DNA of 64,000 nucleotides from Azolla caroliniana. Lineage: Eukaryota > Plantae > Polypodiophyta. Made by a program: the position numbers and the translations under genes. The stretch covers positions 22,630,001 through 22,694,000 of the forward strand of contig JBHGNT010000007.1 of NCBI GenBank assembly GCA_043228905.1, read 5' to 3'. Shown here piece by piece: positions 1 to 64,000 of the stretch; the first letter of the stretch is position 1, and every line of letters begins with the position of its first letter. Below the pieces are notes generated by a model. That model saw only the letters and a program-made list of their open reading frames with translations, made no database searches and was not told the DNA's origin.

Positions 1-138
1 CGTACAGGGTTTTCCACGTTAATCCATGTGTATTCGTGTTCTTTCTCTGTGGTTCCTATTTTCTGCTGCATTGATTCGTGCTTACGCGGTTGTGGCCGAG
101 CGGTGAAGGTTAATCGGAGCGTTGATTGCTTTACAAAC

Positions 139-150
139 TGGTATCAGAGC
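139..150 (+). promoter_or_regulatory. Primer binding site complementary to initiator tRNA-Met
   Basis: TGGTATCAGAGC, 3 nt after the LTR end; canonical plant copia PBS. Confidence 0.95.
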
Positions 151-165
151 GACTGCTGCAGAAAA

Positions 166-36475: not shown

Positions 36476-38227
36476 TCACATAACCATATTTACTTCTGGC
36501 AAATATCCTTCATTTCTAGCCTTCACATTCAACCTTAGCAGCTTTGCATATATAGCATCCACTTGAGGATGTTTTTCGTCCCCCAAGGTGAATTTATACA
36601 CTCTCTGCTCAACTTCAATACATGAATTCCCTGGCTTTTTCCATGCATTCAAAGATTTTCTTTGCTCCAAGAGTTCAGCCATGGCATCCCACATGGCCAT
36701 ACCGCTAAAAAGTTTTGAAAGTAAGACATAGCAGGATGCATCCCTTAACTCTAAATGAGAAACCTGATGTAAGCATCTCTTTCCAAGGTCTGAATTTCCA
36801 TAGACTCTTGAACTATTGAGCAAAGATGTCCATCCAGTCATATTCAGGTCATGTGGCATCTTTTCGAGCAGTGCATCAACCTCCTCTAAGCACCCAGCTC
36901 GCCCGAAAAGATCTAATAAGGAGTTATAATGCTCACTCATCGGCAAGACCCCGTATACATTTATCATTGCTTCAAAATGATGGATACCTTCTTGCACAAG
37001 GCCAATATGGCTACATGCAGAAAGAAGACACACAAAAGTGACATCATTGGGAATTAATCCTTCACTTACCATGCCTTTGAAGTAGTGCAAAACCATGCCA
37101 TATTCACTATGAAGCGCATGTGCTGCCATCATAGCAGTCCATATGACCGCATTTCGGTTTCTACTTTCCCCATAAAATACAGAGTGTACATCGTCAAGAT
37201 CTCCACATTTGGCATACATATCAATGAGGATGCTTCTTATGTATGCATCTGAACATAGATCAGACTCCGTGATATCCGCATGAATCAACTTTCCTTGATC
37301 TAACGCTGCTAGAGCAGAGCATGCTTTTAGAACACTCACATAGGTGAAATTATCGGGTTTTTTGCGACTTTCAAGCATATCGCGGAAGAGGGCAAGAGCC
37401 GAGAAGTAATCCTCAATCTGTACATATCCATAGACAATGGCATTCCAAGACACATTGTTTGGTTCAATGCCTTCATTTCGCATCTCATTGAAGAGAGCCA
37501 TGGCTTCGTCGCAAAGAGAATGTTGGGCAAGAGCTGCAATCATTGCACTCCAAGAGACAACATCCCGCCACTTAACACAAAGTCCCCCGAATACAGAGAG
37601 AGCATCATCTAGAGCTCCACATCGTCCATACATGCTAATGAGAGTATTACAAATGAAAATATCAGATTCTTGTGAGGATCCAACAATATCGTGATGAAAT
37701 CGTTTGCCGTTGTGCAAATCTTCAAGGCTCGAGCAAGCTTTGAGGAGAGCAACATAAAGATGCCCATCAGGCCGAACCTTGTGATTCGGGTTATTCTCAC
37801 TTTCTCGATGCATCTCCTCGTAGAGATGAATCGCTTGCTTGGGTTCTCCATTTTCACAAAGTGCTGAGACGATACCACTCCATGCAAACACATTGGGAGA
37901 CTGTAGTTTTGCAAAGACTATGCTTGCTTCTAGAAGCTTATAACCACAATAACTACCACCAATAGAAGGAGATAAGAGCGAGAAGAGGCGGATCAGGTAG
38001 CTCCCTACTATAGTGTTTCTTTCTACTGAGCCACCATCATCATCAATATCATCGTGTTGAACTATGAAGCAATGCGCTTCTCTGCCCACATCAATGTTTC
38101 TGGTGTTGATACAATCCTGTAGAAGAGAGGTGAGAAGCTTGATCACACTCCGTGTGTGCCTGTCTTCTTTTACTAATGATCTTTTCACTGTCTCTAGCTT
38201 CTCCAGAAGCTTGCTTCTCTCACTCAT
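36476..38227 (-). CDS. Pentatricopeptide-repeat protein, PLS class with E1/E2/E+ extension and no DYW domain (putative organellar RNA-editing factor), 583 aa, intronless
   Basis: Repeated PPR motifs (VSWSAMIAALAQ, NTLISMYGRCG, LIDMYAKCG, VTFVCLLSACSH), E domain YVLLS, PG box KKPGNSCIEV, ends HPQ...GYLPE. Confidence 0.93.
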   Translation of the reverse strand: MSERSKLLEKLETVKRSLVKEDRHTRSVIKLLTSLLQDCINTRNIDVGREAHCFIVQHDDIDDDGGSVERNTIVGSYLIRLFSLLSPSIGGSYCGYKLLEASIVFAKLQSPNVFAWSGIVSALCENGEPKQAIHLYEEMHRESENNPNHKVRPDGHLYVALLKACSSLEDLHNGKRFHHDIVGSSQESDIFICNTLISMYGRCGALDDALSVFGGLCVKWRDVVSWSAMIAALAQHSLCDEAMALFNEMRNEGIEPNNVSWNAIVYGYVQIEDYFSALALFRDMLESRKKPDNFTYVSVLKACSALAALDQGKLIHADITESDLCSDAYIRSILIDMYAKCGDLDDVHSVFYGESRNRNAVIWTAMMAAHALHSEYGMVLHYFKGMVSEGLIPNDVTFVCLLSACSHIGLVQEGIHHFEAMINVYGVLPMSEHYNSLLDLFGRAGCLEEVDALLEKMPHDLNMTGWTSLLNSSRVYGNSDLGKRCLHQVSHLELRDASCYVLLSKLFSGMAMWDAMAELLEQRKSLNAWKKPGNSCIEVEQRVYKFTLGDEKHPQVDAIYAKLLRLNVKARNEGYLPEVNMVM

Positions 38228-45094: not shown

Positions 45095-48000
45095 CTACAG
45101 TAGAAGTGAGCCACCATTTTCAATGCCTTCTTGATTGTCCATTGACATTCTTACATGTGCTGCTCGCAAAGCATCTGCGAGATATTCATCCAATGCATCC
45201 AATTCACCATTATCACGCATTTGTGGATAGTCACAGGCAATGCATTCAATCGCACCCTCTACAAGCCTCCACTGCTCACACATATCTGCTAATTTTATAA
45301 CTTCTGTCCCTAAATGTAAGTTCTTTGCCAAAAGATCTAGAACAACCATCACGCATTGCTCATTCAGATCCTCAAGCAGCCATTGCTGGGCAACCTGAGA
45401 GAGTTCCACATACAACTTTAAATGCTTTATTTGATCTGACCTAAATAATGAAGACCACATACACCCTGCTTCTGGGATCTGTTTCTGTGGAAGAGTAGAT
45501 GAATATAGATACTGTAGCAGCCATCTCAAAGATTGGATATCTAAGGGAACCTTTAGAACTTTTGCAATGCTGCATATGACACGTACAAGATATTATTGCA
45601 TTCTTCCATAATAGTTTCATTCTTACAATAAAACTGAAAATTTCATGTTCATATTCTAGATACCTGTCTTGCATGCCTGATCGAAAAAGCCCCTCAAAAT
45701 AGCTACACTGTGCCGAAAGTATAGCCCGGTGTGCATGTTGGTGGCCTACATCTCCTTTACTCACATTACAACCAACTTGATAATTGTCCTTATCCTCGAA
45801 ATAAATATCTCTGCATGTAAAAATCAAAATCAGATATTAAGGCTACACGTCATATTTCATTTCAAAGATAGGAGTTTCTTTTCTTTTATCCTTTTATTAA
45901 ATACATTTATGGTATTGTTCTCTTCTGGCTTCTATTATTCAATAATTTCCTTCTCCTCTCTCTTACTAATTCTTTATCATAGCAACATGATATTGTTTTT
46001 AACCTGATCGTTACTCCAGTACACACACTGACTTCCCATAAATACTATTAGACAACATCATCAATGAATCAGAAAATCAGGCCACGGCTTTTTCTTTAGC
46101 TTTTTATCTTACACTTGTATAATGTATCAGATTATTTTTATTTTTTAGCTTTGATCATTTGGCCTTGGTTGCAGGAGTTAATACAACATTTCATTTCTCT
46201 CTAGAATTAAGAAACTATTTTACTCACGCAAAGTTGCAACCTTTACTGCCAACTGCAGAGGTGAAATCATGAATATCAGGAACACTGCCCCATACAGGCA
46301 TCTTCCCCTCGAGTAACCTGAAGAAAGTATCCATGTGGCATCGTTTTGCTAACAATTTGACATCAGCTACCAGTTCCTCATCAATGAATGCAAGTCCTTT
46401 GTATATGAATTCCAATAAAGTCTTCATTGAGGCTTCATGTATACGTGCTGAAAGATTTAACTCCATAGGATGCCTCCTTTGAGATGCTGCCTGTTTAGAA
46501 GAGGGCAAAAGATCCGGACATTTGATTGCAATAATCACCTTATGGGCATAAAGACGGTTACCACTAGAAAAAATCAGGTGAACATCTGCCGTGTTAATAT
46601 CGTTGAATAGTTTTGACAGTTGACTTCTATCAGATGGGAAACCAAACAAACCACAAGATGCAAGACAGCACGATGCCCACCAGCGAATGCCTTCAGCAAC
46701 TTTCCGGGAGCCAGCTAAGACAAGTAAATGGCTGTCGATGTCTTCATCTGGCATGATACTCCAGTTCAAAGGGTTAGAAAATCTCTTCTTCAGAGCTGCA
46801 TTTATCTTTTGGGCTGTGTATGATCCGCGAGCTAAATTAGCAAATCCCCATAAGGTAAAAAATAAGATAGGATTACTTCCTTCCCATATGTTCAGGTTAT
46901 TGCAGCAACACATGTTCAGATCAACAGGTATATATAAGCATGTTGTAGCAGCAACACGTGTCTGAAGTGACACATTTATAAAAGAGTGTGCCTTGATAAC
47001 TTCAACAAATACATCCAACACACCATGCTCAAGAAGTTGTCTATGACAATGTGCAGATACAGACAAACAGCTCGTGGCAATTAAGCTCATAACAGTAATC
47101 ATGTTCTCAGTTGCTGCTCCAGAACTGAACGTTAGTGAAAGCTTACTGACAAAAGAAGGTAACCAATCATATCCATGTTGTTGCAAGCGAAGCTCAAGCC
47201 TACATTTCGTAGTGTCTGACAAGTGATGTGATGGTGAATAAAGAAGGAAAAGTACCACTTTACAAATTAGAACACCTTCTAAACCTGTGCAATAGAGATC
47301 CTGTAGATGCTTTAAATCTGGGTCTATACCCCTCCTGTCAACCACTTTCAACAGTATCGCACTGATGAAAAATCCAGCATAGTTATGGTTAGAGATAGCA
47401 TACCCTTATATATGAAATTCCTCAACAACCATGTAATAAAGTGCATTATATAAAATGACAAATGGACTGAAATGGAATTGCTCTTGAAGGTTATGGTAGT
47501 TCAATAAAACCATGAAGCAATAACCTCAAATGATAAGTTGAAATGCAGAATCCACACAGAACATTTTATTCAGAGCCCATGCCAGGAGAGATGAAAGAGA
47601 AAGGCAAATTGGAAAATAATTTAAGCATGCAACCCAGGAATAATGTAGTTTTTTCCAACAAAACAGGCAAGAATGGCAGCCTGCTTTTATACATGCACTT
47701 GAGACATGTGATAATTCGTACATTCATTATGTAAAAACGTGCTTCCAGATGGGGAATTCCCCCCTATATATGGCAGTGAAATTTAAAAAATCACAGAACA
47801 GAAACAGATGAAATATGTTCACAACAGTAAAACAGGTAGGACTTGCAACCGGGTTTTACACATGAACTTCAGGCATGCGATAATACCTTTGATACATTCA
47901 TCATACATTTGGATGAAAATCAGTGCTTCCAGAAGGGGAAATTCACTGCATCCTATGGCAGTAAAATTTAAATTATCCAGACACAGAAATGGATGAAATA

Positions 48001-51000
48001 TCCTCGCAACAAGGATAAGAAATGTGCCTGGCATGGGAAGACCTGACTGAACCATAATGCCATGGATGAAATGTGTTTGGTGGACTATTATATCCGTAAT
48101 TGTTTTAATACAAATAGCAGGAACATATTTCTTGTTGTCACATATATATGAGACCACAAGCATGAATAGACGACAGTGACCTATGGAATAGAAGACCCTC
48201 AATAGTCTTCAGGGTGAGCGATTTTATCGTTAGTAATAAATAGAGAAATTATAAAGCTTCAGCATAAGAAACATGAAAAGTGAACACTGCGTATGATTCT
48301 GAGGACATAAATATATTAAATTTAAGACAAATTTATTCACTTCAATAATTTAATTTGGAATTCCAGAGCAAATATGCACATAAAGAATGCATCATAATCT
48401 GCATGCAAGAAAAAAAATCTGTGATGCCGGTAAAGAAAACACCAATCCTTGTTCATGAACTGATGCATGGAATGATCTTGTGGAGCTGAATTCATAAGCC
48501 TGCCAAGGAAAAGCACATGACTAACACCAGATTACCGATTGTCAAACATGTACACATACAGACATACCCATATGTATGTGTGGAACATAAGCTCATGTAT
48601 GTGTGACTTAATTAATATTGTACTTTATACTCATTTCTTTTTCTCTAAATTGACATGCATAGGTATGTGTTTAGAGTATTTTTATAACTGCAAGATACAT
48701 TGGTCAGATTTGTTTTTACTAAATGGAAATCTGTATCTCCCACAACGTGTTATCCCAATTTCTGCATATGGGTTCATTCACAAGTTATTCCCAGAAAACC
48801 AGCAGTCATCAATGCTTTGAAGCTGAGGGCTCCCCAGTAGAATGTTCTAGATATTATAGAAAGTCTGAAATGATATGGAACGTAAGGCATCTAGTTCTGC
48901 AACTGTCAATTAATTTTTAACACATTCAATCACTCTCTTATCTTCCAATGACTTCCTACCCTACAGCAGCCTCTAAAAAGAAGGCTTCAGTAATGGAAAC
49001 AATCATAAATCCAGACTTACTCAAGATATAGATACTAGAAAATTATAGTATATGTGCCAGGTGAATTCATAAAGAATAATATCCACTTGGCAACTGAACA
49101 ATCACTGTCCCACCAGCAATCTAGGTTCTCGTTTAACACATACAGATTATAGGACTAGAAAGTAATCCTAAAAGAATTCTTTGAAGGTCGGAGCTTACCA
49201 TGCAAAATCAACTGTTCTTGATATCAATGCCACTTGCTGTTTTGTTCTCAAAAGGGTTTCCTCACCTAATGTAGGAGCATTAATGAAGAGCCAACCCAAT
49301 GCATCCCACAAAACAGGCCCAAGAACTGCATCATACTTTGCTGACTTTGTAATGACAGCAATATCTTTTTGGACATGGCTTTGTACACCAGCATCATATA
49401 TGTCTAGTAATAAGTTGCAAGAAACGGTGGAAAATCCAGCCCTCCAAAAGGAGTGATGATGATTTCCAGGTAAACGAAGTAAGCCCTGAGCTGCTTGAGA
49501 TGCTTTCAGCACTAAATTTTTAACATCTGAAGGCCATCTAGAATTAGTATATTCTAGTCCTTCAGAAATTGCATATGTGATATTTTTGCAAACAGTATCA
49601 GCAAGGGACTCACTGAATAACGTGCTCAAAGCACAAGATCTCTACAAAAGGATCACAACACTATTAGCAACTTCCTACTGCAAAAGACACAGAATCATGC
49701 CACTAACAGATAAGGAAGTTCAAACATACTGTCAAAGTATAAAGAAAATGGAATGCTTCAGTTCTGATATTGCAACTCCTTGATGGGTTCGTATTAGTCA
49801 CTAAACAAGTTGATACTGCGTCACTGTCTTGAACCTGCAATGATGCAACCCCTCCACACAGGGCTACACAATTAATTAGGTAAACAAAAGATGACAAGTA
49901 TTTGATTCATCTCTATTAATCATTACTATGATAATAACTCAAAAGAGGTAATGGCATACCTAATGCAGCACAAAGCCTCAGAGCCGCAGATGAGACAGCT
50001 TCATTTAAATTTGAACATTGAAAGAGAACAGTTTTTTGGAAGTTTGAATTGCTACCAAGGGAAAATCTCGCGACTTTCCAGAAGTGACAAATAGCTGAAA
50101 GTAGATCAGCTATTGCTATATAAAGGGAGCTTCCTTCTCCATCAAATCTTTCATGCGTCTGTAATCTATATCCCAAAATATTTAGTACATTCATATCTTT
50201 GAGTGCTTTCCATAAATCTTCTACCCCAATGCCTTCTCTTGACTTGGCTAAGTTAGTAATGATTACTCGCAAAGATGTTGCACATGAAGTAACAGTACTG
50301 GTATTACTGCATAAAAGCAGATGTACAAGAGGTGCATATACTCCTTGAAACTTAGATCCAATGAATGAAACACCCCCAGATGTTATCAACATAGTGGTTA
50401 CTTCTACTGCAACACGGTAAACTTGCTCACTTTCTGCCTTCAGCAATCCTTCTAGTGCTGATATAATATCGTCCAATAAGTTTTTCTGCCCATCATGAAA
50501 GACCATCAGGTACTTGCCTGACAGGACAGATTCTAAAGTAAACATTCATCACACTTAGAAACAAGTCCATATCTGCACCATAATAAAGATTATATCGACA
50601 AAATATGCAATAAGATTCAGACAAGTTTTAATATTCATTGACAATGCAGACAGATGTAATTGAAGTATAAATTATAGAAAGACAACCAATGAAAATAGAA
50701 AGAATACTTGATAAAATGTCAGATTCTGCATGTATCATGTTTCTACCAAACCAGGAAAAACGTTTACAATGTTGGCCTTGAACAATCAAAGATTAAATTT
50801 CCAGCAGAAAAACCAAAACACACTTTAATACCAGCATTAGATGACAAACATTTGGATAGATTTGCCAAATAAAGAAGCTAGCAAATACTGACTACAGGTC
50901 TAACATAAGCCAATAGCAGCACAGCCTCTTTTATATATTTAGAAAGTAGATTTGCTTTCTAGATCTGCTTTTCCTTTATACAGACGACATGACACTTAAA

Positions 51001-54000
51001 AGTTGGTGTCCATCTTGTTCCTACTATTTGTAAATACTCTTTTGGTCCATCACTTGAGTTCACAAGCCCACTACTTAAGGTTTGCGCTTAGTTGTCAATA
51101 ATAATACTCTCCATTTCCTTTTTTCTTTTTTTCAGGGGAAACATGGTCAGGTTCAATAAGATATTTAAACAAATAAGCCATTACGATATTATCTATGAGA
51201 ATGTTCTCTATTGTGATTAGTCGCATCACCCAAATAAGAATTGCTTGCTCCGACTTCTTAGGAAAAGGATCTAGAGGCATTTTGCCCCTTTCTATTTAAT
51301 TCAGCCCCAGACAAATAGAAATTATTTCATTTACCTGACTTCCTTACAAACTGCCAACTATATGCATAAAAGTTGCATGATGTTTAGGTCTCTGACTATT
51401 GTGTATCACTCCTCTTGCTCATCAGCTCATAATAATATATATCTCTCGTTTTAGGTTCTCACTATGTCTTAGGGGTTCTTGTTGTGTTTCAGGTTTCTTG
51501 TCACAAATAAAGGGTTTCTTGCTGCATTTTAAGCTTTTCGCATTTGAAGGTTTCATGCTGCATTTTAGGGTTTCATTCACATGTTTTTTAGGCTTTCTTC
51601 TGCTTTTATGTTTCTTTTGGATGTTCCCTTTCAGAAGGGAAAAATGGAGCTACAGAATAAGTGACAGTAAGGACGCATGCATTAAATGTGCGTGCTCACA
51701 TACATTTTGTCAAAGTTGGATGCCTACGCAAGGGTAGGAATAGTTGCATGCTAGCATAGAAACTAATGATGTGATGCATGCAAAGAAGAGATGTTTCTAT
51801 ATTTATCCAACAAGAGAGGCCATTCTCAAGTTCGCAAGTTTTGAAATTTGATAGGGCCACAATCATAAGGGCGCATGGGAGGCTTGCACGACCAAGGCAA
51901 CATTGTCAATCATAGACTTGCCATGCCAGTTCATAAGTTTTGAAAATTGACGGGGCCACAAATCATAAGGGTACGTGGGAGGCTTGCACAACCAAGACAG
52001 ACTTGCCATGCCAGTTTGTAAGTTTTGAAAATTGACAGGGCCACAAATCATAAATAAGAGGCTTGCACGACCAAGGCAACATTGTTAATCATAGACTTGC
52101 CATGCCAGTTCAGGATATTTCTCCCAAAATTTTCTTATCTTAATTTCTTTTTACCCTACATAAATGGGTTCAAATATTGTATAATTTCGTTCAATTTATG
52201 GAAAACTTATTGTAATCAGTGAGTTTTATATGTTTTCCTCGGATTCCACTTTTCATATAGCAAGTGTGCTTTGAAATTGTCCCCATTTGCCTCTCCCACG
52301 AAAGCTTGACAAGAGAAGAACGAACCTTTTAAAGGCTCCCTACAAGAAAACATGCTTGAAGTTTCTCTCTCATGAATGCCAGTGTGATATACACCTTGAT
52401 TCGCTAATTTGTTTCCTGTTAGCCTCTCCCGCAAAGGCCTGATGCAAGAGAAGCCCTCTTATAGTCAACTTCTGGTGAAGGCTGAGCTCGCAAGTACATG
52501 TGAACCCTCATGTCTCAAAAAAAGTGTGTTTACAAGACACCATCCAAATACCACATTCCTGAGAATATGCCACAAAATCATTGGTACAATGAGGATAAAG
52601 AGATGTATCAGCATCACCATACAAATGAAAGCCTCGGAGAGATTACACAACAAATACCTCGCAAGTACATGTGAACCATTACACCCCAAAAACTGCTACA
52701 AAGAAGCACAAGATTGGGATTTATACCATCTCTTCATGAGCAAAGACTCGGCCACTGCCTCATGATGTATTAGACAGCCCAGAACCCAACCCCAACATAG
52801 GATCCACAACTATGGCATTCTTATGCAGAAAGTTTGTATCATTTTCCATGGCAAACCCCTTTACCACCACCATTAGAGATTCTCCCTAATTCCTCCACCA
52901 TCTTCACCTCATACACGTTTGATCATCTGACCACATGGGATTACAAGGTGAACACCTCATAAAAGTGGAAACCACACTTGCCCCTATCCTTGCACACATG
53001 TTCGATAGAGTGTTCAAACGCATGTATCATGCACATGATCGTGCCTATTCATAAGCCAGGTTACCCTTGCAAATTACGAAACTATAGGACACGATCATAA
53101 GTCAAAGCAGCAGGGAATCGACATATCAGCATGTAGGTCTGCATCATCCCAATGCCTTAGATGGTTTTTGCCATGAAAAAGGGATCATCGTAAACCTAGG
53201 AAAGACAGGCTATAGTCTTCCACGCGTCAGTGCTGACTAGCTGACAAGTTGTCTTCACCCTATCAAAAGAGCAAGTTGAAATAGTGGCTTTCTATGTATA
53301 TGTAGAAGTCAGATAAACAGTGCTGCCATATGGACTCCAGCCATTCCCATGTACATGAAAACACAAATAGAGCATCCATTAGTCAAGATGTTGTCAAGGA
53401 ACCATGCACCCCATGCTGAATTGGCAAAACCCCCATGATTGTAGAAGCTCTATTCTAGGGATGAACCTCATCAACCGTATTTGAACATGCCACATCAAAG
53501 AAGTACATATGAGGCATAGAAGCAAATGGTGAAATAAGGTCACATTAAAGGATCGTGGTAACTGCAAGTAATGAAGTGGTTCTACAACAATGGCCTCAAA
53601 CATCGGGAATTTCCTACCTTCTTAATAGCAAGTATGAAGTGGTTCAACAACAATGACCTCAAACATCGAGAACTTGCCACCTTTATAATAAGTACACATC
53701 TCCGAAATGATGATACGAACAAGGTATTGTGGCAAGATCTATAGCAGCTCTATAACCAAAAGTCTTGGCTCACATCAAGGAGCCACTTCTCCCAAAGACC
53801 ATCTATTGAACTTTTCCGCAGATGATTTCATATAAAGACAGGGGGAGGGGGTAAATGGACATTACATGCCCCATAGCCCTTGCAAAGAAATAGCCCAACT
53901 CAGAGTTTCCTCCCATCAACCAGAGATCGAGGCAAGACAAACACTTTGCATACCTAGAGCTGAAAGACTTGTGAATTATGTAAAGGAGAACATTTTGTGT

Positions 54001-55472
54001 GCAAGTGCTCAGCTTTCAACTACATCAGAGATAAGTATGTCATTCTCTATGAAGATTTCATGACCATTTGACAAATGATAGAGCAGACTAGGCCACAACA
54101 GTTTGTCCAAATCATGCTTGAACTTCAAAAACATAGGGAATCAACCCTTATATTAGCATGTAGAATGCAACGACAAACACACATCACCAATTTCTTCCAT
54201 GGCTCCTTACCTCCACTAACAACATGCGGAGGTGTTACAGGCATGACCATAATTTATTCCATGGTAAGTTGTACTGCAGTATTCTACACACAAGGATAAA
54301 GTGTGAGGGTTAATTGAGAGTGTAAAGAAGGGAGGATTACTTTTAATCCTAGGAATTGAGACAACCCATAAGAGCCAAGTGTGAACTTGCCTGGGGACCT
54401 TAAGTATGGCTATAAATATGAGGCCTATCTACCCTCATTAGTCACATTATTCGACTACGTCGAGCCTATGATCTTGTGGTGAACAGACTCTTGTAGTGAG
54501 CACACCAATACCAAGCACGACTGAATGCCATTGTGGTGGTATGGGACACCGATCAAGCCTCGAGTCTGTCTCGATCCCTCCGCTTGGGGGTGGTCGGGTG
54601 GATCGGCACCCTTCTTTCGCTCTTTTTTCTTTGTCTTCTGCTTACATTAGGAATGATCTCTAACACGAGGAGTCATCAAGAGTGAGCAAAGGAATGTCAA
54701 CAACAGAGTCCACAAGTACCAGGCTATACGGCATATGGGCCATTCCATCACCAGATCATGGAGATCATTGCTCACCATGCATGATACAAACAAGGACACC
54801 CAGATGCACTTGCTAAACTTCATCATAGAACAGTAACCTACGGCATGCATTAAGATCGTGATCATAGATCTTTCGGAAACCTACAGCTTTTGTTTTCATT
54901 TCATTCTGGATGACATGAATTCGCCCATATTTGTAATCAGGATTTGTCTCATAGGCCAATTTTGGCCTCTAGAAGATAAGAATACAATGTGCTGTCTTTT
55001 TTCCTCTCTATCTCAGATATAATGTGCTTTTTCATGGTCAGAATACATAACAACATATTGAGCAAAATGACTATAGAATGAAAAGATGAAGGACATAATG
55101 TTTCTCATCATTAACAAACCTCGATAGACTGAAGTTTTGATTTGTGAGATTTGACAAAGGCTTGAATCGCACGCACGGACTGGCCCTGCATCTCTACATC
55201 AGAATTCCTCCATACTTTCTGCCTTCTCGTGCCTTGATGAAGGCTAAAGCAGAAAAGAAGGGGAAAAAAATAATAAACAAGGGAAAGGGAGAAATGCAGA
55301 GAAGCAAAAAAATAGAATAAAATCAAATAAAGGAGTGTAGGGGAAAGAGAGCAAGAGGAGAAATTAGAAAAAAGGAAGTGGGAGAAGCAGAAGGGGAAAC
55401 AGATATGAGGGGGAGGAAGGAATGAAATTTGGAAGGGTATGAGGTTTGAACAAATACATGGACCAAGAAAAC

Positions 55473-55521
<49 letters not shown>

Positions 55522-55617
55522 AGCTTACGAGGAGGTGGAGGTAGTGAGCCCGAGGCTGAGGAGGCGTCTGAGGCGATCCTCTAAAGCACGAAGAGCTCCA
55601 GTTTTCGCCATCGCCAT
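45095..55617 (-). CDS. ARM-like/BTB-POZ domain protein, At1g04390-like. Exons approx. 55529-55617, 55120-55243, 49960-~50513, 49730-49863, 49199-49641, 46228-47361, 45664-45810, 45095-45569
   Basis: N-terminal RL..LL.LG / W..SDVEMQ...V.AI.AF pattern recalled from At1g04390. Two BTB motifs: DVHLIF...YAHKVIIAIKCP...LLEFIY and HAHRAILSAQCSYFEGLFRSGMQDS...LLQYLY. GT-AG junctions keep the frame; the exon 3 acceptor is uncertain. Confidence 0.85.
51830..52110. repeat. Complex tandem repeat (~3 imperfect copies) in BTB intron 2
   Basis: AAGTTTTGAAAATTGA..GGGCCACAAATCATAA...GAGGCTTGCAC.ACCAAG...AGACTTGCCATGCCAGTT repeated. Confidence 0.8.
52700..54990 (+). mobile_element. Decayed LINE ORF2 relic in BTB intron 2 (related to the 11.4-15.6 kb LINE)
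   Basis: Remnants PIHKPG (~53043), VNLGKT (~53190), IAQLRVSSHQ.EIE (~53890), and the shared 3' motif at 54942-54976. Confidence 0.6.
54233..54665. mobile_element. Solo LTR (433 bp) nested in the LINE relic
   Basis: Termini TGTTA...TAACA, flanks GGAGG/CGAGG (4/5 TSD match), internal TATAAATA at 54411. Confidence 0.7.
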
Positions 55618-55622
55618 AGCCA

Positions 55623-55660
<38 letters not shown>
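55478..55660. repeat. (GA)n and (CT)n microsatellites flanking BTB exon 1
   Basis: (GA)n at about 55478-55518 in intron 1 and (CT)n at about 55625-55660 in the 5' UTR. Other SSRs occur at 7073, 11039, 21230, 56186 and 60977. Confidence 0.9.
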
Positions 55661-55665
<5 letters not shown>

Positions 55666-56184
55666 CTGTTTTCTCTGAGAAAACGACGACGATGATGACG
55701 TGGCTTCTTCTACATACATATTTACTTATTATTTGTGTTTTATCCATTTATTTCGCTTTTACTTAATTAATTAAATGTTTTTATAATTTTCTTTTCGCCT
55801 TCTGTTTACATAAATATGTATTTCCTTCTAGATTATGCATTTTTAATTTATTCTTATAATTCGCACCCCCCCCCCCCCCCGGGTCACTATTTGATACAGA
55901 AATAATAAATAGTGAGAGCCCGTGAATCTAGGCCTTGGACGGCTCTAAACTCGTCTCGGGAATCCTAGATGATCGGGGCCGTCCAATTATTTTAGATCTA
56001 AAAAAAGGAAAAGAAAATAAATAAGAAAATAAAAATAAAACAAAAAAGTGAATAATAGGAGAGAGAAAACATTTGGGGGGGGGGGGGGGGGGATTTTTGA
56101 ACGTGTATGCTTTGTCTCTGTGTTTCTCTGTCTCTGTGTTTCTCTACGTGCTCCATCTCTGTCTCTGTGTGCTGCGTGTTGCGT

Positions 56185-56240
<56 letters not shown>

Positions 56241-57264
56241 TCCATTGCGGGCTTCCTCTACGTGCTTCCTCAGCCTCCAATTTCAACATCTTGGTGGAAC
56301 AACAGGCGGAGTTCACGAACGACCAGTAAGAAATTAGGTATATTTCTGTTTATTCTTTCCATTTTAATTAGTGAGTGCTATTTCTACAAGAGATAAATCA
56401 TTATCACTAGGATTAAGGTGATTATATATGTTGAAAGTCTGAGTGTTGATGTATAGTGAGTGTTATTTCTACAAGAGATTAATTACATCATTATCACTAG
56501 GATTATGGCTGAAATGTTTCAGTGTGCAACAAAATGCCAAATCTGATGTTGGCTAATTAGTTCACAACATATGATATTCAGAGAGGGCACTTATTATAGG
56601 TCTTCCATATGAATCTTACACGATTGAGTGGAGTGTACATCTAGCAGGCCAACATATGTGTATACATACCGTGAGACATTTTTTCTCTCTTATAAGCTGC
56701 TTCATACAACAGAGGATACACACATTCACAAGCCCTGGCATGTGCCAGACATTTGACGCTAACATACGTGGATACATAAATTTGGTATGGACGACCGTAG
56801 ATACATACATTGAGGCCCTGCCATAGCTTATTGCAGAGTCATCTACTATTAGATATGTACATTAAGATACATATATATAGCTAAAAGTTATGAAATTATA
56901 TACAATGTATGCCCCCAGATGCAGACATTTCGATACATGCATAAATCCCATTTAAATAAGATATTTTTCTCATTTACACTCTAAATTCCAGAGGGCTCGA
57001 ATGTGAGCACACATACATAGAATGAAGCTAAGTGATAACAAAATATTGTTTTTGATGTTTTTCTCCCCCTCTTTGTAATTGTAGGATCAAATGAACCAAG
57101 GTATTTGGGGTTTAGGACATTGACTCTTCATCATATCTATCAAATCCACCTTTAAAGACCAAGTAAGTTTCCCACCCAACCTTAAATTGCTATCAACATG
57201 CAAGGTTTTACAAATGAATGAAGAATATCAAGAATTTTGTTTTGTGGTTTTAGGGGTAAACAAG

Positions 57265-58248
57265 ATGTTTGACTTTGACTTAAACTTGAGTCCATCTCAT
57301 TGTTCTACCTCTCATGCACTTGAGATACAAAATATGGATGCTTTGAATGATGATTGGGGCTCACTTGATGACTTTGATTATACTAGTAGTGATTCTATAA
57401 GTTCAGATTCACACACAAGTGATTCAACTAGTGACAACGAGTCATTGGAGAATAAGAACCTCATTATGATGAATGAAAATCTCAAAAAATATCCCGACGC
57501 TAGTTTATTTGTGCCAAAAAGTTATTTTACTTTTAATAAGGCTTGTTATGATTTAATGGTTGATGATATATTAGGAGTTCGTAAAATTACACTTGACTTG
57601 TTGAGGGATGCCAAAGACGGTGTAGTAGTGGATCTTAGATTGTGGAAATCTATGAAACAACGAATATTGTTAATGGGAGATCGAGAGATATATTTAAAGG
57701 ATTCTCCTAATTGTAGGATACCATATATCGAACAATGGGGAGATATAGTGGTGAATGCACATGTTAAAACTAGCCATCTAGGGCTAAAAGACACATTAGA
57801 TGAAATTAAGAAAGGTTGGTCGGTGGATACCCGATATTATGGGCTATCAAAGGTGTATGTAAAAGCATGCATTGATGCGTGTGGATGTCAAAAGGTACAA
57901 AAAACGACACCTTTAGACATCCAACATCATACTAGATCCATCCCAAATGAAGAGTTCACGGTAGAAGAATCCATGTTGGGGGTTGTATTAGATGATATTC
58001 AGATTAAATATTGTACGTGCTTAAAGAAGTCTTATACCAATACCAAATATCATGAAAGGTATGTTTGTCACCGTTGGGGGGAGTCAAAAAGGGGTGGCAA
58101 ATACATTCGTCGATGTAAGACTTCAAAACGATGTGGATGCACTTTTCGTGTTGATGTCAAAAGGTCAATTGGAGACCGAAAACAAGCGACCATCTCTGTA
58201 TATGCCCAACACAAAGGTCATGATCCAAGTGCACCACATGAGGTGTAT
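57265..58248 (+). pseudogene. Mutator-like (MULE) transposase, N-terminal half only
   Basis: Strong similarity to the minus-strand copy. H-x4-H...C-x-C zinc motif, FAR1/WRKY-GCM1-like YVCHR...CGC...HKGH. Ends at the junction with the antisense copy. Confidence 0.8.
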
Positions 58249-60282
58249 CAATGCATGCACCAAATCAGTTATGGATCGATTAATTCTTCCTCTAAATGCG
58301 GTGTACTTGATATATTGCCAATGCCTCTCAACGATATTTGTAGTGTCCACATGGCCATATTGGAACATTCTTCCAAACTTGGGCCAAGTATTTCTCCAAA
58401 TGTCATTACACCAACAATTTTTTATGTAGTTGCAAACTAATTTTTGCTCATTGTATTCTTCCAATATTTCAGCATATACATGATCAAATTCTTCTTCTTT
58501 ACTAGCATACATGAGTTGGCACATTCGAGCATATAATTTGTCTCTTTCGTTGCCATGAACTTTTGGCAATAGATGGTCAACCTATGCTTTTTTCACATGG
58601 AACCAACAAAGCAAAATTTTGCAAGTTGTTTGTTGCCTTATATCATTGACCATCTCCCAACAATATGGATCAGATGTAATAACATTTTTCAAAGCAATGT
58701 ATTCTACCCAACACTTATCTATTACCAGGGCATTCGGTCGGATACCTTTCATTCTTTCAAATATCTTCTTTAGTGTCATTTCCAATGCGAGTTGTTCATG
58801 ATGATATCCTGCATCATTGGTGCAAAGCATATACCACAATGGGATGCCAACCCCTTGCTCGTTTGGTGCAACGGCAGCATATAAGGGCAATCCAAATACA
58901 TTAGTCTTAAACGTAGAATCAATTGCCCAAGCATTGTTCTTTGATAAGCGCATACACATGTTTAACATCCATTGATCTTGTATTATTAGAACAAATGGTT
59001 GCTTTGTAGGAATATACGGTTGAATATAAGCTACTTTTCCTTGATCCTTCAATGCATATGCTTCTCGTATCATTCTAGTCCAATCATCTACGGCTATAGA
59101 TTTTTTAACATTTAACTTGCTAGCTATATTTTGAACCTCCTTTGTAAGTATAAAAAACCTAAAAATAACTCTCTCAACATGTGTAACTTTGTTCTTATGG
59201 ATAATCGCTTTCCTCATGCTTATCCTTGCTACATGCCTTGCACATCCAACATCAAAAAGATCTTCCATACAACAATGGATGACATTTGGGTGCACCTTTA
59301 AATAATATACCTCATGTGGTGCACCTGGGTCATGGCCTTTATGTTGGGCATATACAGAGATGGACACTTGTTTTCGATCTCCAATTGACCTTTTAATATC
59401 AACATAAAAAGTACATCCACATCGTTTGGTAGTCTTACATCTACGAATGTATTTACTACCCCTTTTTTATTCCCCCCAACGATGACAAACATACCTTTCA
59501 TGATATTTGTTTTTGGTTTTACACTTCTTTAAGCATGTAGAATATTTAATTTGAATGTCATCTAATACAACACTCAGCATAGATTCTTCTACTACAAACT
59601 TTTCACTTGGGGCACTACTAGTATGATCAAGCATGTCTAAAGGCGTCGCCTTTTGTACCTTTTGACATCCACAAGCATCAATGTATACTTTCACATAAAC
59701 CTTTGATAGCCCGTGATATCGGGCATCCACTGACCAACCTTTCTTAATTTCATCTAATGTATCTTTGAGCCCTAGATGGCTAGCTTTAACATGAGCATTT
59801 GTCACTATATCTTCCCATTGTTCGATATAAGGTATCCGTAAATTAGGAGACTCCTTTAAATATATTTCTCGATCTCCCATTAACGATATTCGTTGTTTCA
59901 TCGATTTCCATAATCTAAGATCCACTACTACACCATTTTTGGCATGCCTCAACAAGTCAATTGTAATTTTACGAACTCCTAATATATCATCGACCATTAA
60001 ATCATAACAAGCCTTATTAAAAGTAAAATAACTTTTAGGCATAAATAAATTGACATTTGGATATTTTTTGAGATTTCCATTCATCATATTGAGGTCATCA
60101 TTATCCAATGACTCGTTGTCACTAGCCGAATCACTTGTGTTAGAATCTGAATTGGTCGAATAACTACTAGTATAATCATTGTCATCAAGTGAGACCCAAG
60201 CATCATGTAAAACATTCATATTTATGTTTTGAAGTGCATGAGAGGTATCACAATGAGAGGGACTCAAGTTTAAATCGAACAT
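58246..60282 (-). pseudogene. Mutator-like (MULE) transposase, one frame with two nonsense mutations (59467 TAA, 58582 TAG), 3'-truncated
   Basis: ORFs 59467-60348, 58582-59367 and 58165-58569 are in the same frame. MULE core AIDSTFKTN.FGLPLY, VIDK, CWFHVKKA(W), TTNIVERHW; no SWIM domain before the junction. Confidence 0.88.
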
Positions 60283-60972
60283 CTTGCTTAGCCCTAAACC
60301 ACAAAATAACAATTCTTGGTATTCTTCAATCTTAAGTAAAACCTCCACACTTCAACTTAGAAATTTAAAGTTGGGCAGAGAACGCAAATAAAAATGCAAA
60401 TAAAAATGAAAAAGAAACTTCTCTAGAACAACTATACATGCAAGCCAATGAAAATGCCTATTAAATCCTTTACTATTCCACATGAAAGCAAATGAAAATG
60501 CACATGAGAGCGACTAAACACTTCAAGGGAAAGCAAATGACAGAGAATTAGTGCCATTGAAATGAATGCATTTTGTGAACTAAACAAAATCCAAATTGTT
60601 TTGCATTCAAGGACAATAATTAGTACCTCCGATTCTTTGTTTATGTATACAGAACGACTCCCCCAATGCACTTCTCCTGTTGTTCCACCCACAAACGAAT
60701 CTGAAAACGAATCAAGGTATTTCCTTTAGGTTCAATACCCGATTCATTAATTGAAAATCTTTCTGGTCCCTCGTGGGTGAAGCTCAGTGGAGGTCTGAAC
60801 CGACTGATGTTGAAAAATCAAGTTGTTGCAAGCTGTGGGGATAAGCTCTACGCGCAGAGATCACGCAGAAAGCAAAGAGAGAGAGAGCAAGAGAGCACGC
60901 AGCGAAGAGAGAAAACACCTAAACCCTAAACGCGCAGAAGAGAGCACGCAGGAAAGCAGGAAAGAAAGAGAG

Positions 60973-61018
<46 letters not shown>

Positions 61019-61769
61019 CAAAATTAATATTTCTCGACCTCTTTCCGTTTTATTTAATTAATATTTGTGTGTTTTTTTGTTTTAATATTATGCATTTATT
61101 TACTTTTATTCGTCCATTTGATTCTCATGAGAGTTTTATTTATTTATTTATTTATATTTATATGTATTAGACATTTATTTATATTTTATTTATGTATTTA
61201 TTTATTTATTAATTATATAATACACATATATATATATGTATTAGAAATTTATTTATTTATATATGTGTATTTATTTATTATATTTATATTTATATTTATA
61301 TGTATATGTATTGATTGATTATATATATATTTATATATACATGTATTAGACATTTATTTATATATATATATGTATATTTGACAAATGGGTCGATTTGTCC
61401 ATTTATTTCTTGATATTTATCAGGTTTCTTTTGCATTTCTCGCTTTGTGTTTTTTTTATATAGATTATATTTTCAATCTTGTTTAATTACTTTAATTTTA
61501 TCTATTTATCACTTTAATTTTATTGTTTTATCCATTATTTGTTCATTCTTTTGATCCTATTTATATATTTATCCATATGCTTTTTACATAAAATTATGAA
61601 TCCATTTATTTACTCATTTGTCCATCTACTTTCTATTTATTTCCCCGATAATGCCCTTGCAGTTGCTTATGTGTCCATAATCATTTCTATTTATTTGCAT
61701 TATTGCCCCACAAATGCCCCTTACTCATTGGTTCATTAATTCTCTATTTTACTCGCATTATTTTACCCC

Positions 61770-62165
61770 CTTTAAACATGCCCCTTGAGTCCAACCAGAC
61801 ACTCTGTGAAGAACTCTTGTTAGTTAAACATGCGATCCAAGCAACCAATCCTAAGCATAACTGCAACACCCCCCTTCTTTCTCAATCCTTCTATAATTCT
61901 CCCCTAAATATGCCCTTGGGGTCCGAACACTCTGTGAACTCCTGCCAATTTTTCGTTAAGTGTTGTGATTTGAGCAACCAACCGTAAGCATCATTGCAAC
62001 ACACCCTTCCTTCTCAATCCTTCTATCATACCAAATTCTCCCCTAAATATATCCCTAGGGTCCAAACACTCCAACCTCTCTTTTGCTAGTTTTTTGACAC
62101 ATGGTGCAATCCGAGCAACCAACCGTAAGCATCTCTGCACACACCTCTTCCTTCTCAATCCGTTC
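61770..62165. repeat. Three diverged tandem copies of a ~135-bp unit
   Basis: TAAA.ATG/TATCCCT..G.GTCC.AACACTC...GCAACCAA.CGTAAGCAT...CTTCTCAATCC repeated three times. Confidence 0.75.
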
Positions 62166-64000
62166 CGCCGCTTCCATCTTACCAAATTCTAGTCACTCCA
62201 ACTTGCTTTCTCTTTTTTCAATGCCTAGCAAGGGCCTCCAAACAAATGGCAAAAACTCGGCATTGTCTTAATAAACACTCGAGAGATACTTCAATGTTTC
62301 TTCCTTTTGCTTTGTTTTATTTCCTCCTACTTTTGTACTTGTCTCCTTTCTCTCAACCATACAAGATGGCCAGTATTATTGCCCAATAGTCCTAGCAAAA
62401 ACCCACATATTCCCTCATTACTAATAGGCACAATGCATAAAAACAGAATACACTGAGACTATAGATGCTATGCCCAAACAAGTGTCTATCTTCCATATGG
62501 AACATCCGGTTTTGTGTAAAGAAATACACAAATGATGTGAAATTGTGATTTCGACCCCTCTTTCATCTTAAATCTACATAAAAAGCATCCACGTCACCCA
62601 TACACATAAAAGAAGGGGAGGAACAAGTGACCTCGCAAATGTCTTCTTTCTAGCACTCATTTGAAACTCTTAGGGACTTGCAAAGCTTTTAGATTAGATT
62701 GGATATCGTAAAAAGGTCACATATTCTGCATGTATAATGGTATTTTATCTATCCCTCAGTGTCCCATACCTGTTTTCAGTGCTGTGAACAATAATAATTG
62801 GAAATGTCGATTCTCAATTTGAGACTAGTATGGAATGTAGAAAGCAAGCCAGAGAACTCTAAATGCCCAAGGGAAATGTATATACCCTAGTCACATTTCC
62901 ACCTATAGTCCAAGAAAATGGTTTCTTTACAAAATGGTGATGCTCACAGTTCGTCTACCATCGTCCAATGATGTCTTTGTCGCCTTTGTTTTGCACATGA
63001 TGATTCTTCCTTCATACTAACGATATTTAATCTAAACCAATGTCCTACAATATGACCTCATCTCCATCCGCATCACTCTTATGCACATGCATGCATTATG
63101 AACACATTACACTCCATGTTAATACATTGATTCAAAAATCTAAAACCGATGCAGCATTTTGAGGCCCACTGCAAAGAAGAGTACTAAGAGTTTTATTGGT
63201 TGAATCTACAACCGAAGTGTCGATAGGTGCTTGATTCAATTTTTCGAGGGATATTATCTTCCTCCGTGAAAATTTTAATGCATACACAGCAGACTCGGGT
63301 ACAATGGGTACCTACATACCACAAATAATGAAACAAATTATACACTTCATGATTGTTCAGTAAAAAAATACTAGCGTTACGTATGTAACCTGTGTGTTGA
63401 TTGAAGGGAGTTTTAAGATCCGCAGAAATCCAATTGTATCGTTGTAATCCGTGATTAACGACATCATGCTTTTGTCATCATCTGTTCCACAATTAAACCC
63501 TTTCGTAAGCAATAAACATAAACAAAAAAACTTCGCATTCAACTCTCTCCCATATAAAAGAATTCTAATATGGACACAGTTATATGAGGACTAACAGTTT
63601 TGATTTCTATGAATATTTGTAGAAACCATAAAACCATGACCAAGATGATGATAATCAACGGACAAGATTTCTCCAAGCACTGAAGCCAGGGCTCAGAGTT
63701 TAGCGTTCAGATCTATATCAACATGAACCCTAACTATGCTAGATTTCTCCAAGCACTGAAGCTTAGCTTCAGGGTTTCTACAAATGTTCAAGATCAATGA
63801 CACTAAGCAACTTTTGATATGTTTTTATGATGAGATAGGTAAAAATAACATTAGATCTGATCCACCACCTGGCACAGCCTCCACAGATAATAAGATATCC
63901 GCCATGTGTTGCCACCGAACAGAGAAGTTTGAAGACAATAATGAAGCAGGAAAGGTGATCATGGCTACAGTATTCGAAGCTCGAACTAGCCCCTTCAAAG

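What the first reader, a model, noticed from the sequence alone, without database searches (positions are those of the whole stretch)
56100..61015. Mu killer-like locus: two MULE transposase 5' halves fused tail-to-tail into a long hairpin between convergent promoter-like regions
Seen in sequence: a plus-strand MULE 5' half (to 58248) is joined at a 3-nt TAT overlap to the antisense of a related MULE copy. This gives ~1.07-kb arms (57175-58248 / 59305-60375) around a ~1.06-kb spacer carrying most of the DDE core. The arms contain perfect runs long enough for siRNAs, e.g. 44 nt at 57517-57560, then 30 nt after one G:U-compatible mismatch. Each side keeps a 5'-UTR-like (CT)n tract pointing inward (56186-56232 on +, 60977-61012 on -). 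The left side also has splice-like signals (acceptor near 57085, donor near 57163). Established: maize Mu killer is an inverted duplication of a partly deleted MuDR whose hairpin transcript makes siRNAs that silence the family in trans. Inference: read-through from either side would give a fold-back RNA, making this a candidate natural trans-silencer of a MULE family. Unlike Muk, it appears built from two diverged family members and could therefore target two subfamilies.
Basis: partly seen in the sequence, partly recalled or inferred. Interest (0 to 1): 0.8.

Follow-up and report, generated by a model that had tools for sequence, protein, structure and literature searches.

The report
Two fern Mutator halves fused tail-to-tail
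Two broken copies of a fern jumping gene from different branches of one family are joined tail to tail, so a transcript across them would fold into a long hairpin like the maize "Mu killer" locus that shuts down its own family; whether this one is ever transcribed is untested.

Summary
Arms 57175-58248 (+) and 60375-59305 (-) align over 1085 columns at 88% identity. The 1056-nt spacer is the antisense continuation of the right copy and carries the MULE/DDE core.

New evidence from 21 public contigs of the same family:
- The right copy (R, 58249-61025) is 99.5% identical to a contig with an intact 1047-codon transposase.
- The left copy (L) belongs to another subfamily. It is 92% identical to a contig with an intact 1046-codon gene.
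- Arm dN/dS is 0.275, so the arms diverged as working genes. This is a fusion of two family members, not a decayed duplication.
- The (CT)n tracts lie inside the family's long terminal inverted repeat (TIR). L keeps a whole TIR from 55883. R lacks the outer ~240 bp of its TIR.
- The window holds only one true terminus, so the composite cannot move.
- The junction microhomology is AT to ATCA (58247-58250), not TAT.

A transcript across the junction would fold strongly (-1663 kcal/mol against about -720 for controls), and 92% of R-arm 21-mers match the intact R-type copy. Transcription, siRNAs and silencing could not be tested.

Earlier notes of this scan describe other fold-back transposon loci on other DNA of this genome. 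This locus is a good but unproven Muk-like candidate.

The parts
55883..56270 (+). Complete 5' terminal inverted repeat of the left (L-type) MULE. It comprises an outer segment (55883-56070), a G17 run (56077-56093), the motif TGCGTGCTCTC (56180-56190) and (CT)24 (56186-56232).
   Evidence: Aligns with the 5' end of L007 and, in inverted form, with the 3' ends of L005, L012 and L002. Homology starts sharply at GTCACTATTTG. The outer-TIR motifs occur only once in the window. Motif count.
56271..57264 (+). L leader. It holds an exon-1-like stretch with GGTGGAACAACAGG (56293-56306), a putative intron with about 700 extra nt relative to L002, a mini-exon (57085-57162) and an acceptor at 57253.
   Evidence: The 14-mer occurs only here and at 60676-60689 on the minus strand, against 0 expected. 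blastn to L002, L004 and L011 resumes at 57042/57052. Splice signals were read and are unverified.
57175..58248 (+). Left hairpin arm: the last 90 nt of the L leader plus L transposase codons 1-328 (ATG at 57265). The frame is open to the junction and for 63 codons beyond it (stop codon ends at 58440).
   Evidence: tblastn with P0037 gives 82%. No Pfam domain even at E<=10.
58247..58250 (.). Tail-to-tail junction with 2-4 nt of microhomology (AT, or ATCA).
   Evidence: Comparison with the uninterrupted L-like (L002) and R-type (L001, L003, L004, L005) sequences. blastn end points.
58249..59304 (-). Spacer or loop: right-copy (R) transposase codons 327-678 with the MULE/DDE core. It is cut after ...DLVHAL. 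A private nonsense codon TAG lies at 58582-58584.
   Evidence: Pfam MULE, E 3.6e-08. 98.5% aa identity to the intact 1047-aa P0037. G>A at 58583 is private to this copy.
59305..60375 (-). Right hairpin arm: R codons 1-326 (ATG at 60282) plus 93 nt of leader. Nonsense codon TAA at 59467-59469 (codon 272).
   Evidence: 99.6% nt identity to L001. The stop at codon 272 is shared with contig L004.
60376..61025 (-). R leader and the inner part of the R TIR: GGTGGAACAACAGG at 60676-60689, TGCGTGCTCTC-type motifs at 60857-60950, and (CT)18 seen as (GA)n at 60977-61012. Homology to intact copies stops at 61025, so the outer ~240 bp of the TIR are missing.
   Evidence: 99.5% identity to L001:64-2836 ends at 61025. 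End sequences compared. No outer-TIR motif to the right and no family DNA elsewhere in the window.

Best explanation
Shown:
- The locus is an immobile chimera of two members of one fern Mutator-like (MULE) family.
- On the left is the 5' half of an older L-type element: its whole 5' TIR from 55883, its leader, and codons 1-328.
- At 58247-58250 it is joined, through 2-4 nt of microhomology, to an inverted 2.78-kb piece of a young R-type element. That piece holds codons 678 to 1, the leader and the inner TIR, and it is cut at both ends.

Inferred origin:
- The join arose by break repair, either end joining or a template switch during gap repair of the L element. It did not arise by duplication of one element.

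Inferred mechanism:
- MuDR's TIRs carry its promoters. If the L TIR does the same and fires, RNA polymerase II would read through the junction.
- The RNA would carry L sense sequence, then 2 kb of antisense R-type transposase.
- It would fold into a roughly 1.07-kb imperfect stem with a 1.06-kb loop.
- Dicer-like enzymes would cut it into 21-24-nt siRNAs.
- These would act mainly on R-type elements, and weakly on L-like elements, as Mu killer does on MuDR.

My odds: structure and origin about 0.85; the locus gives hairpin or antisense-derived siRNAs today about 0.35-0.4; it has really silenced the family about 0.2.
For: - Arms and junction.
- R is 99.5% identical to L001 over 2779 nt, and L001 has an intact 1047-codon ORF.
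- The L arm and its adjoining leader are 91-92% identical to L002, which has an intact 1046-codon ORF.
- Arm dN/dS is 0.275 (CI 0.18-0.41) with dS 0.31.
- In the tree, R sits inside a 100/100 clade that excludes L.
- R has only 7 private substitutions in 2777 nt, against 32 private to L in about 1200 nt. The R piece is therefore young.
- TIR anatomy and the single terminus.
- RNA fold: MFE -1663 (+) and -1689 (-) kcal/mol against about -720 with one arm shuffled, and 959 of 1074 arm bases pair with the other arm.
- Perfect 21-mers shared with L001: 92% of the R arm and 96% of the spacer.
- Precedents: Muk (PMC3440606); Ac composite insertions that give dsRNA and siRNAs (bioRxiv 10.1101/2020.01.07.897926); TE loci rearranged into inverted repeats give siRNAs (PMC10827316).
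Against: - No expression, small-RNA or methylation data were available.
- No promoter can be called with these tools.
- The R side has lost its outer TIR.
- AATAAA and ATTAAA motifs lie inside the read-through path and could end transcripts early.
- L's private substitutions show no C>T excess that would hint at long-standing methylation.
- The intact L001 and L002 copies come from public metagenome contigs of the same or a close species, not provably from this genome.
- The junction was not found in any public protein or contig, so it has no independent confirmation.
Confidence: 0.5

Rival explanations
1. Inert scar. The structure and origin are the same, but both TIR promoters are silent. 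The locus then gives only the ordinary Pol IV 24-nt siRNAs of any dead transposon and has no trans effect.
For: Most plant transposon copies are transcriptionally silent (general knowledge; PMC10827316). R lacks its outer TIR. There is no sign of selection or of copies of the composite elsewhere. Earlier notes of this scan report many fold-back transposon loci in this genome, which suggests they are common repair by-products.
Against: L keeps a complete TIR, its leader and an open frame. The R piece is very young, so it formed while R-type elements were probably active. Long inverted repeats are efficient siRNA sources once transcribed.
Confidence: 0.38
2. Protein-level repressor. The open L frame (57265-58440: 328 transposase residues plus a 63-residue foreign tail) would give a truncated protein that lacks the catalytic domain. 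It would poison or compete with full-length transposase, in the manner of KP repressors of the P element.
For: The frame is open across 391 codons. L's terminal branch still shows fewer nonsynonymous changes than neutrality predicts: an N/S count ratio of 1.8 against a neutral 3.98. A separate subfamily (the P0003 cluster, 13 proteins of about 267-282 aa) also encodes only the N-terminal part.
Against: The 328 residues have no recognised domain, so DNA binding is only my reading of a C..C..H.H pattern. From my own knowledge, MuDR deletion derivatives were reported not to act as dominant negatives (Kim and Walbot 2003), which I did not check here. There is no expression evidence.
Confidence: 0.05
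3. Assembly artefact. The junction at 58248, or the one at 61025, joins reads from two different loci.
For: The junction has no independent confirmation. R-type copies are repeated, and repeats invite misjoins.
Against: Fold-back read chimeras give near-perfect palindromes, but these arms differ by 12% and belong to different subfamilies. There are no Ns. The join is clean, with short microhomology typical of repair.
Confidence: 0.04
4. A mobile fold-back derivative. The composite would be a non-autonomous MULE with two 5'-type ends that transposes as a unit.
For: Both sides carry TIR-side sequence in inverted orientation.
Against: The outer-TIR motifs occur once only, and R stops 240 bp short of a terminus. 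No TIR+TSD pair flanks the composite. No second copy of L or of the junction turned up in the public data. R's outer TIR could still lie beyond the window end if a large insertion displaced it.
Confidence: 0.03

Closest known systems
Mu killer (Muk) of maize
   Same: Both derive from a Mutator-superfamily autonomous element. Both have two partial 5' copies of the transposase gene, each with TIR-side sequence, in inverted tail-to-tail order and without the 3' part of the gene. Arm length is about 1.1 kb here and 1.3 kb in Muk (PMC3440606). Both have a neighbouring host gene.
   Different: Muk is described as a partial inverted duplication of one MuDR (PMC3440606). Here the halves come from two subfamilies (88% identity, dN/dS 0.275). 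One half runs 1056 nt further and puts the antisense DDE core in the loop. One TIR is incomplete. No genetics, transcripts or siRNAs are known for this locus. The host is a fern.
Ac/Ds composite insertions made by alternative transposition (maize p1-ww-id alleles)
   Same: Both hold inverted repeats of fractured transposon pieces. In maize these are transcribed from the element's own or a flanking promoter and yield dsRNA, 21-22-nt and 24-nt siRNAs and heritable silencing (bioRxiv 10.1101/2020.01.07.897926).
   Different: The maize loci belong to the hAT superfamily and were made by sister-chromatid transposition with re-replication, from copies of the same element. Here the microhomology junction and a piece cut at both ends point to break repair, not to a transposition reaction.
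Endogenous inverted-repeat (endoIR) siRNA loci of plants
   Same: Both are long, imperfect fold-backs read by Pol II and cut by several DCLs into 21-, 22- and 24-nt siRNAs (PMC10827316, Table 1).
   Different: That class is defined by measured small RNAs, and none are available here.
MuDR internal-deletion derivatives and Pack-MULE-type sequence acquisition
   Same: Both involve short microhomology at junctions and foreign or inverted filler copied during repair of the element. Template-switch models for Pack-TIR elements are in PMC8277862. Microhomology-mediated deletion with interrupted gap repair is in PMC3814204.
   Different: The acquired piece here is not host DNA but a relative of the element itself, placed in antisense. 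The product has lost one terminus.

Membership tests
Mutator-like element (MULE) family | Transposase with a MULE (DDE) domain | tested here: met
   Pfam PF10551, E 3.6e-08, in ORF 58582-59367 (-). The same domain is found in the intact relative P0037.
Mutator-like element (MULE) family | Long terminal inverted repeats at both ends of full-length copies | tested here: met
   The 5' ends (window L, L007) align with the reverse-complemented 3' ends (L005, L012, L002) over at least 230 nt, starting at GTCACTATTTG. In this locus only one complete TIR is present.
Mutator-like element (MULE) family | 9-11-bp target-site duplication | tested here: inconclusive
   No TIR+TSD pair flanks the composite. 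This is expected if one terminus is missing. The contigs did not give both ends of a single copy.
Mu killer-type silencer locus | Two partial 5' copies of the transposase gene in inverted, tail-to-tail order, with the 3' part absent | tested here: met
   tblastn with P0037 finds residues 1-679 (-) and 2-326 (+), and no residues from 680 to 1047 anywhere in the window.
Mu killer-type silencer locus | Both outer ends are the transposase-side TIR | tested here: inconclusive
   The L TIR is complete. The R side keeps only the inner TIR as far as 61025, and its outer ~240 bp are absent from the window.
Mu killer-type silencer locus | Halves arise by duplication of one element | tested here: not met
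   88% identity, dN/dS 0.275. R groups with L001 at 99.6% and L with L002 at 91.8%.
Mu killer-type silencer locus | Transcript that forms a hairpin or is antisense to the transposase mRNA | not testable with these tools
   Only the fold of a hypothetical transcript could be computed.
Mu killer-type silencer locus | siRNAs and dominant, heritable trans-silencing of the family | not testable with these tools
   This needs sRNA-seq, methylation data and crosses. Sequence potential only: 92% of R-arm 21-mers match the intact L001.

The most novel reading that the evidence does not exclude
A natural hetero-subfamily killer locus in a fern. An old L-type MULE's intact TIR promoter drives antisense and hairpin RNA made from a freshly acquired piece of a young, still intact R-type relative. 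One subfamily's remnant would then have become the trigger that first exposed a newly amplifying sister subfamily to RNA silencing, with weaker cross-silencing of its own kind. This would be the first Muk-like initiator outside maize. It would also be an example of how identity-based silencing can be seeded across diverged transposon lineages.
Probability: 0.15. Interest if true: 0.75.

Novelty: new variant of a known kind. Interest (0 to 1): 0.45.

Why it matters
How a host first recognises an active transposon is still an open question. Muk and the Ac composite insertions are the few loci where the trigger is known, and both are in maize.

This locus has the same architecture in a fern. Both target subfamilies have intact full-length transposase genes in public contigs of the same or a close species. 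The 12% difference between the arms lets small RNAs and transcripts from this locus be told apart from those of other copies. That makes it a directly testable candidate.

Together with the other fold-back transposon loci that earlier notes of this scan report for this genome (which I did not check), it also suggests that break-repair chimeras may be a regular source of hairpin loci in large fern genomes. If it turns out to be silent, it is still a clean, dated example of microhomology-mediated fusion between transposon subfamilies.

Tried and rejected
DNA of relatives came instead from the search for related loci.
2. A systematic search for a TIR (>=14/20) plus TSD (8-11 bp, <=1 mismatch) pair around the composite gave none.
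3. Exact look-up of six ORFs of the locus in the public protein collection found none. A homologue search with the R ORF that crosses the junction found no hit covering both sides. Both results are uninformative and are not evidence against the junction.
4. The L ORF search found no copy closer than 81%. The length filter hid full-length L-like proteins, and L002 later filled that gap.
5. Pfam on the arm-encoded 328 residues gave nothing even at E<=10. My reading of a zinc-finger-like C..C..H.H pattern therefore stays an unsupported impression.
6. An Rfam scan of 55000-62500 gave no family.
7. I first inferred a TAT/ATA overlap from protein P0037. DNA of relatives showed that the R-type codon is ATT, so the overlap is AT to ATCA.
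8. The mutation spectrum of L-private and R-private changes, as a proxy for methylation, involved small numbers and gave no clear bias.
9. Poly(A)-like hexamers along the read-through paths were listed, but they are not decisive in plants.
10. The idea that the (CT)n tracts mark a microsatellite target site or are a plain 5' UTR was rejected. They lie inside the TIR at both ends of intact copies.
11. Earlier-findings look-ups by place near the locus, by sequence and by word sets were blank.
12. A paper search for the ERZ assembly accessions gave nothing, so the source sample of the contigs is unknown.
Full report
**1. Observation**

The repeat finder reports an inverted pair at 57274-58248 / 59305-60279: 975 nt without gaps, 87% complementary, 1056 nt apart. 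blastn extends it to 57203-58248 / 60344-59305. A local alignment gives 57175-58248 against 60375-59305, with 1085 columns, 932 matches and 11 small indels.

The 44-nt perfect run at 57517-57560 and the 30-nt run after it exist. Simulation at this identity gives 6.2 runs of 21 nt or more (8 seen) and P = 0.17 for a longest run of 44 or more. The runs are therefore a by-product of 86-88% identity, not a feature in themselves.

**2. What the pieces encode**

The left copy (L, + strand):
- Its frame is open from the ATG at 57265 to the junction (328 codons).
- By chance the frame runs on for 63 more codons in the antisense of the other copy.

The right copy (R, - strand):
- It is colinear from the ATG at 60282 down to 58249 in one frame.
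- The frame is broken only by two nonsense codons, TAA at 59467-59469 and TAG at 58582-58584.
- Its middle part has a Pfam MULE domain.
- It ends after ...DLVHAL, past the NIVERHW stretch (which I read by eye as the E of the DDE triad). This is residue 678 of a 1047-residue protein.
- tblastn with that protein finds no C-terminal third anywhere in the window.

The arm-encoded 328 residues match no Pfam family.

**3. Relatives**

A word-based protein search found four clusters. One of them, P0001, is nearly identical to R. Its cluster holds an intact 1047-aa protein, P0037, to which R is 98.5% identical and L 82% identical. The closest named relatives are hypothetical MULE proteins of Adiantum ferns at about 50% identity. 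This fits earlier notes of this scan that call the genome a fern.

From these:
- R (58247-61025) matches L001 at 99.5% over 2779 nt.
- The L arm and the adjoining leader (57042-58250) match L002 at 91.0%.
- L001 carries an intact 1047-codon ORF and L002 an intact 1046-codon ORF.
- The window shares other repeats with the flanks of contig L006, so the contigs come from the same or a close species.

**4. Two family members, not a decayed duplication**

- Nei-Gojobori dN/dS between the arms is 0.275 (bootstrap CI 0.18-0.41), with dS 0.31 and differences of 32/25/54 by codon position.
- In a maximum-likelihood tree, R sits inside a 100/100 clade of near-identical copies that excludes L.
- In the arm CDS, R-L001 is 99.6%, L-L002 is 91.8% and L-R is 87.1%.
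- Counts on the branch between the two subfamilies are 38 synonymous and 50 nonsynonymous, far from the neutral ratio of about 4.
- R has 7 private substitutions in 2777 nt. L has 32 in about 1200 nt.

The R piece is therefore young and joined an older L copy.

**5. Ends of the elements**

Comparing the window with the contigs shows the family's terminal region, from outside to inside:
- an outer segment of about 190 nt that begins GTCACTATTTG;
- an A-rich stretch;
- GGGAAATTTTGAATCC;
- (TC)n;
- repeats of TGCGTGCTCTC.

The same order, inverted, follows the gene in L005, L012 and L002. This region is therefore a long TIR, and the (CT)n tract lies inside it.

L keeps the whole TIR from 55883. 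R's identity to L001 stops at 61025, at AATTTTGAATCC, so R lacks about 240 outer nt. The outer-TIR motifs occur only once in the window, and no family DNA lies elsewhere in it.

Two short motifs occur colinearly in both leaders and almost nowhere else in the window. Both upstream regions therefore belong to the family. No TIR+TSD pair flanks the composite.

The composite has one terminus and cannot transpose. R is a fragment cut at both ends, unless an insertion larger than 3 kb has pushed its outer TIR beyond the window.

**6. Junction**

Uninterrupted L-like DNA reads ...GGTATATCATTTG. Uninterrupted R-type DNA, reverse-complemented, reads ...CTCCAATCAATGC. The window reads ...GGTGTATCAATGC. 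The overlap is AT (58247-58248), or ATCA (to 58250) if L's parent had the L002 variant. It is not TAT.

Short microhomology joining an inverted piece of a relative is the signature of end joining or of a template switch during gap repair. Models for such events are in PMC8277862 and PMC3814204. This step is inferred.

**7. Folding and targeting potential**

ViennaRNA folds 57175-60375 to -1663 kcal/mol on the + strand and -1689 on the - strand, against about -720 when one arm is shuffled. 959 of 1074 arm bases pair with the other arm.

Share of 21-mers with a perfect match in an intact copy:

| Segment | Target copy | Share of 21-mers |
|---|---|---|
| R arm | L001 | 92% |
| Spacer | L001 | 96% |
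| L arm | L002 | 19% |
| L arm | L001 | 6% |

A transcript from the L side would carry 2 kb of antisense R-type transposase even if it did not fold. Canonical poly(A) hexamers lie along both paths. Rfam finds nothing.

**8. Context**

The ORFs on the minus strand at 46.2-50.5 kb belong to an ARM-BTB gene. Pfam finds a BTB domain, and the atlas structure search hits the At1g04390 type at TM 0.79. A possible first exon lies at 55525-55612. The L terminus sits about 220 bp upstream of it and points away from it. This fits the known taste of Mu elements for gene 5' ends (general knowledge). The exon assignment is inferred.

**9. Comparison with known systems**

Muk has two copies of TIRA and 1.298 kb of mudrA on each half, ending in an inverted duplication. 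Its silencing individuals make antisense transcripts (PMC3440606). Ac composite insertions with inverted fractured Ac give dsRNA, 21-22-nt and 24-nt siRNAs and heritable silencing (bioRxiv 10.1101/2020.01.07.897926). Rearranged TE inverted repeats are a recognised siRNA source (PMC10827316).

This locus shares the geometry. It differs in three ways: its halves come from two subfamilies, it is asymmetric, and one TIR is incomplete. All functional criteria remain untested.

**10. Verdict**

Structure and origin are well supported (about 0.85). Function is open. I put about 0.35-0.4 on the locus being a present-day source of hairpin or antisense siRNAs, about 0.2 on real trans-silencing, about 0.38 on an inert scar, and a few percent each on artefact, protein repressor and mobile derivative.

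Earlier notes of this scan describe several other fold-back transposon loci on other DNA of this genome. That lowers the surprise of one more instance but points to a recurrent process.

Noticed in passing
window 46224-55662 (-): A host ARM-BTB gene of the At1g04390 type. There is a possible first exon at 55525-55612, flanked by (GA)n at 55478-55518 and (CT)n at 55626-55662. The MULE terminus lies about 220 bp upstream of it and points away from it.
   Followed up: partly
window 55866-55880 and 56077-56093: A C15 run abuts the L terminus, and a G17 run sits inside the L TIR where relatives have only GGGGG(A). These are homopolymer expansions in and next to the TIR.
   Followed up: no
P0003 cluster; L007:1695-3813: Thirteen near-identical public proteins of about 251-282 aa (most 267-272) cover only the N-terminal part of the transposase, and L007 has its first stop at codon 268. 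This may be a derivative subfamily that encodes a truncated protein.
   Followed up: no
window 56340-57041: The L leader has about 700 nt that L002 lacks, including an 85-bp tandem duplication (56369-56398 / 56454-56483). This is probably an insertion into the first intron.
   Followed up: no
window 59467-59469; L004 codon 272: R's TAA nonsense codon is shared with contig L004, which is 98% identical, although R is closer to the intact L001. This could be a recurrent mutation or exchange between copies.
   Followed up: no
L005:2026-4040: About 2 kb lies between the transposase stop codon and the 3' TIR, and it holds no ORF of 80 aa or more. Unlike the fern MULEs with a Ulp1 helper gene noted elsewhere in this scan, this family seems to carry a single gene.
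   Followed up: partly
window 61030-62170: To the right of R's cut lie 370 nt of AT-rich low-complexity sequence and then three repeats of about 140 bp (61763-62161). Their origin is unknown and they match no contig of the family.
   Followed up: no
window 126-3545, 9395-9994, 36476-38227: A Copia-type polyprotein ORF (gag, integrase, RT), a second Copia fragment, and an intronless PPR gene with an E motif.
   Followed up: no
window 57800-57960 (L) and P0037 residues ~185-235: The N-terminal region shows an H-x4-H ... C-x3-C-x-C pattern, read by eye. It recalls the integrase-like HHCC segment that another note of this scan reports for a MULE transposase. There is no Pfam support.
   Followed up: no
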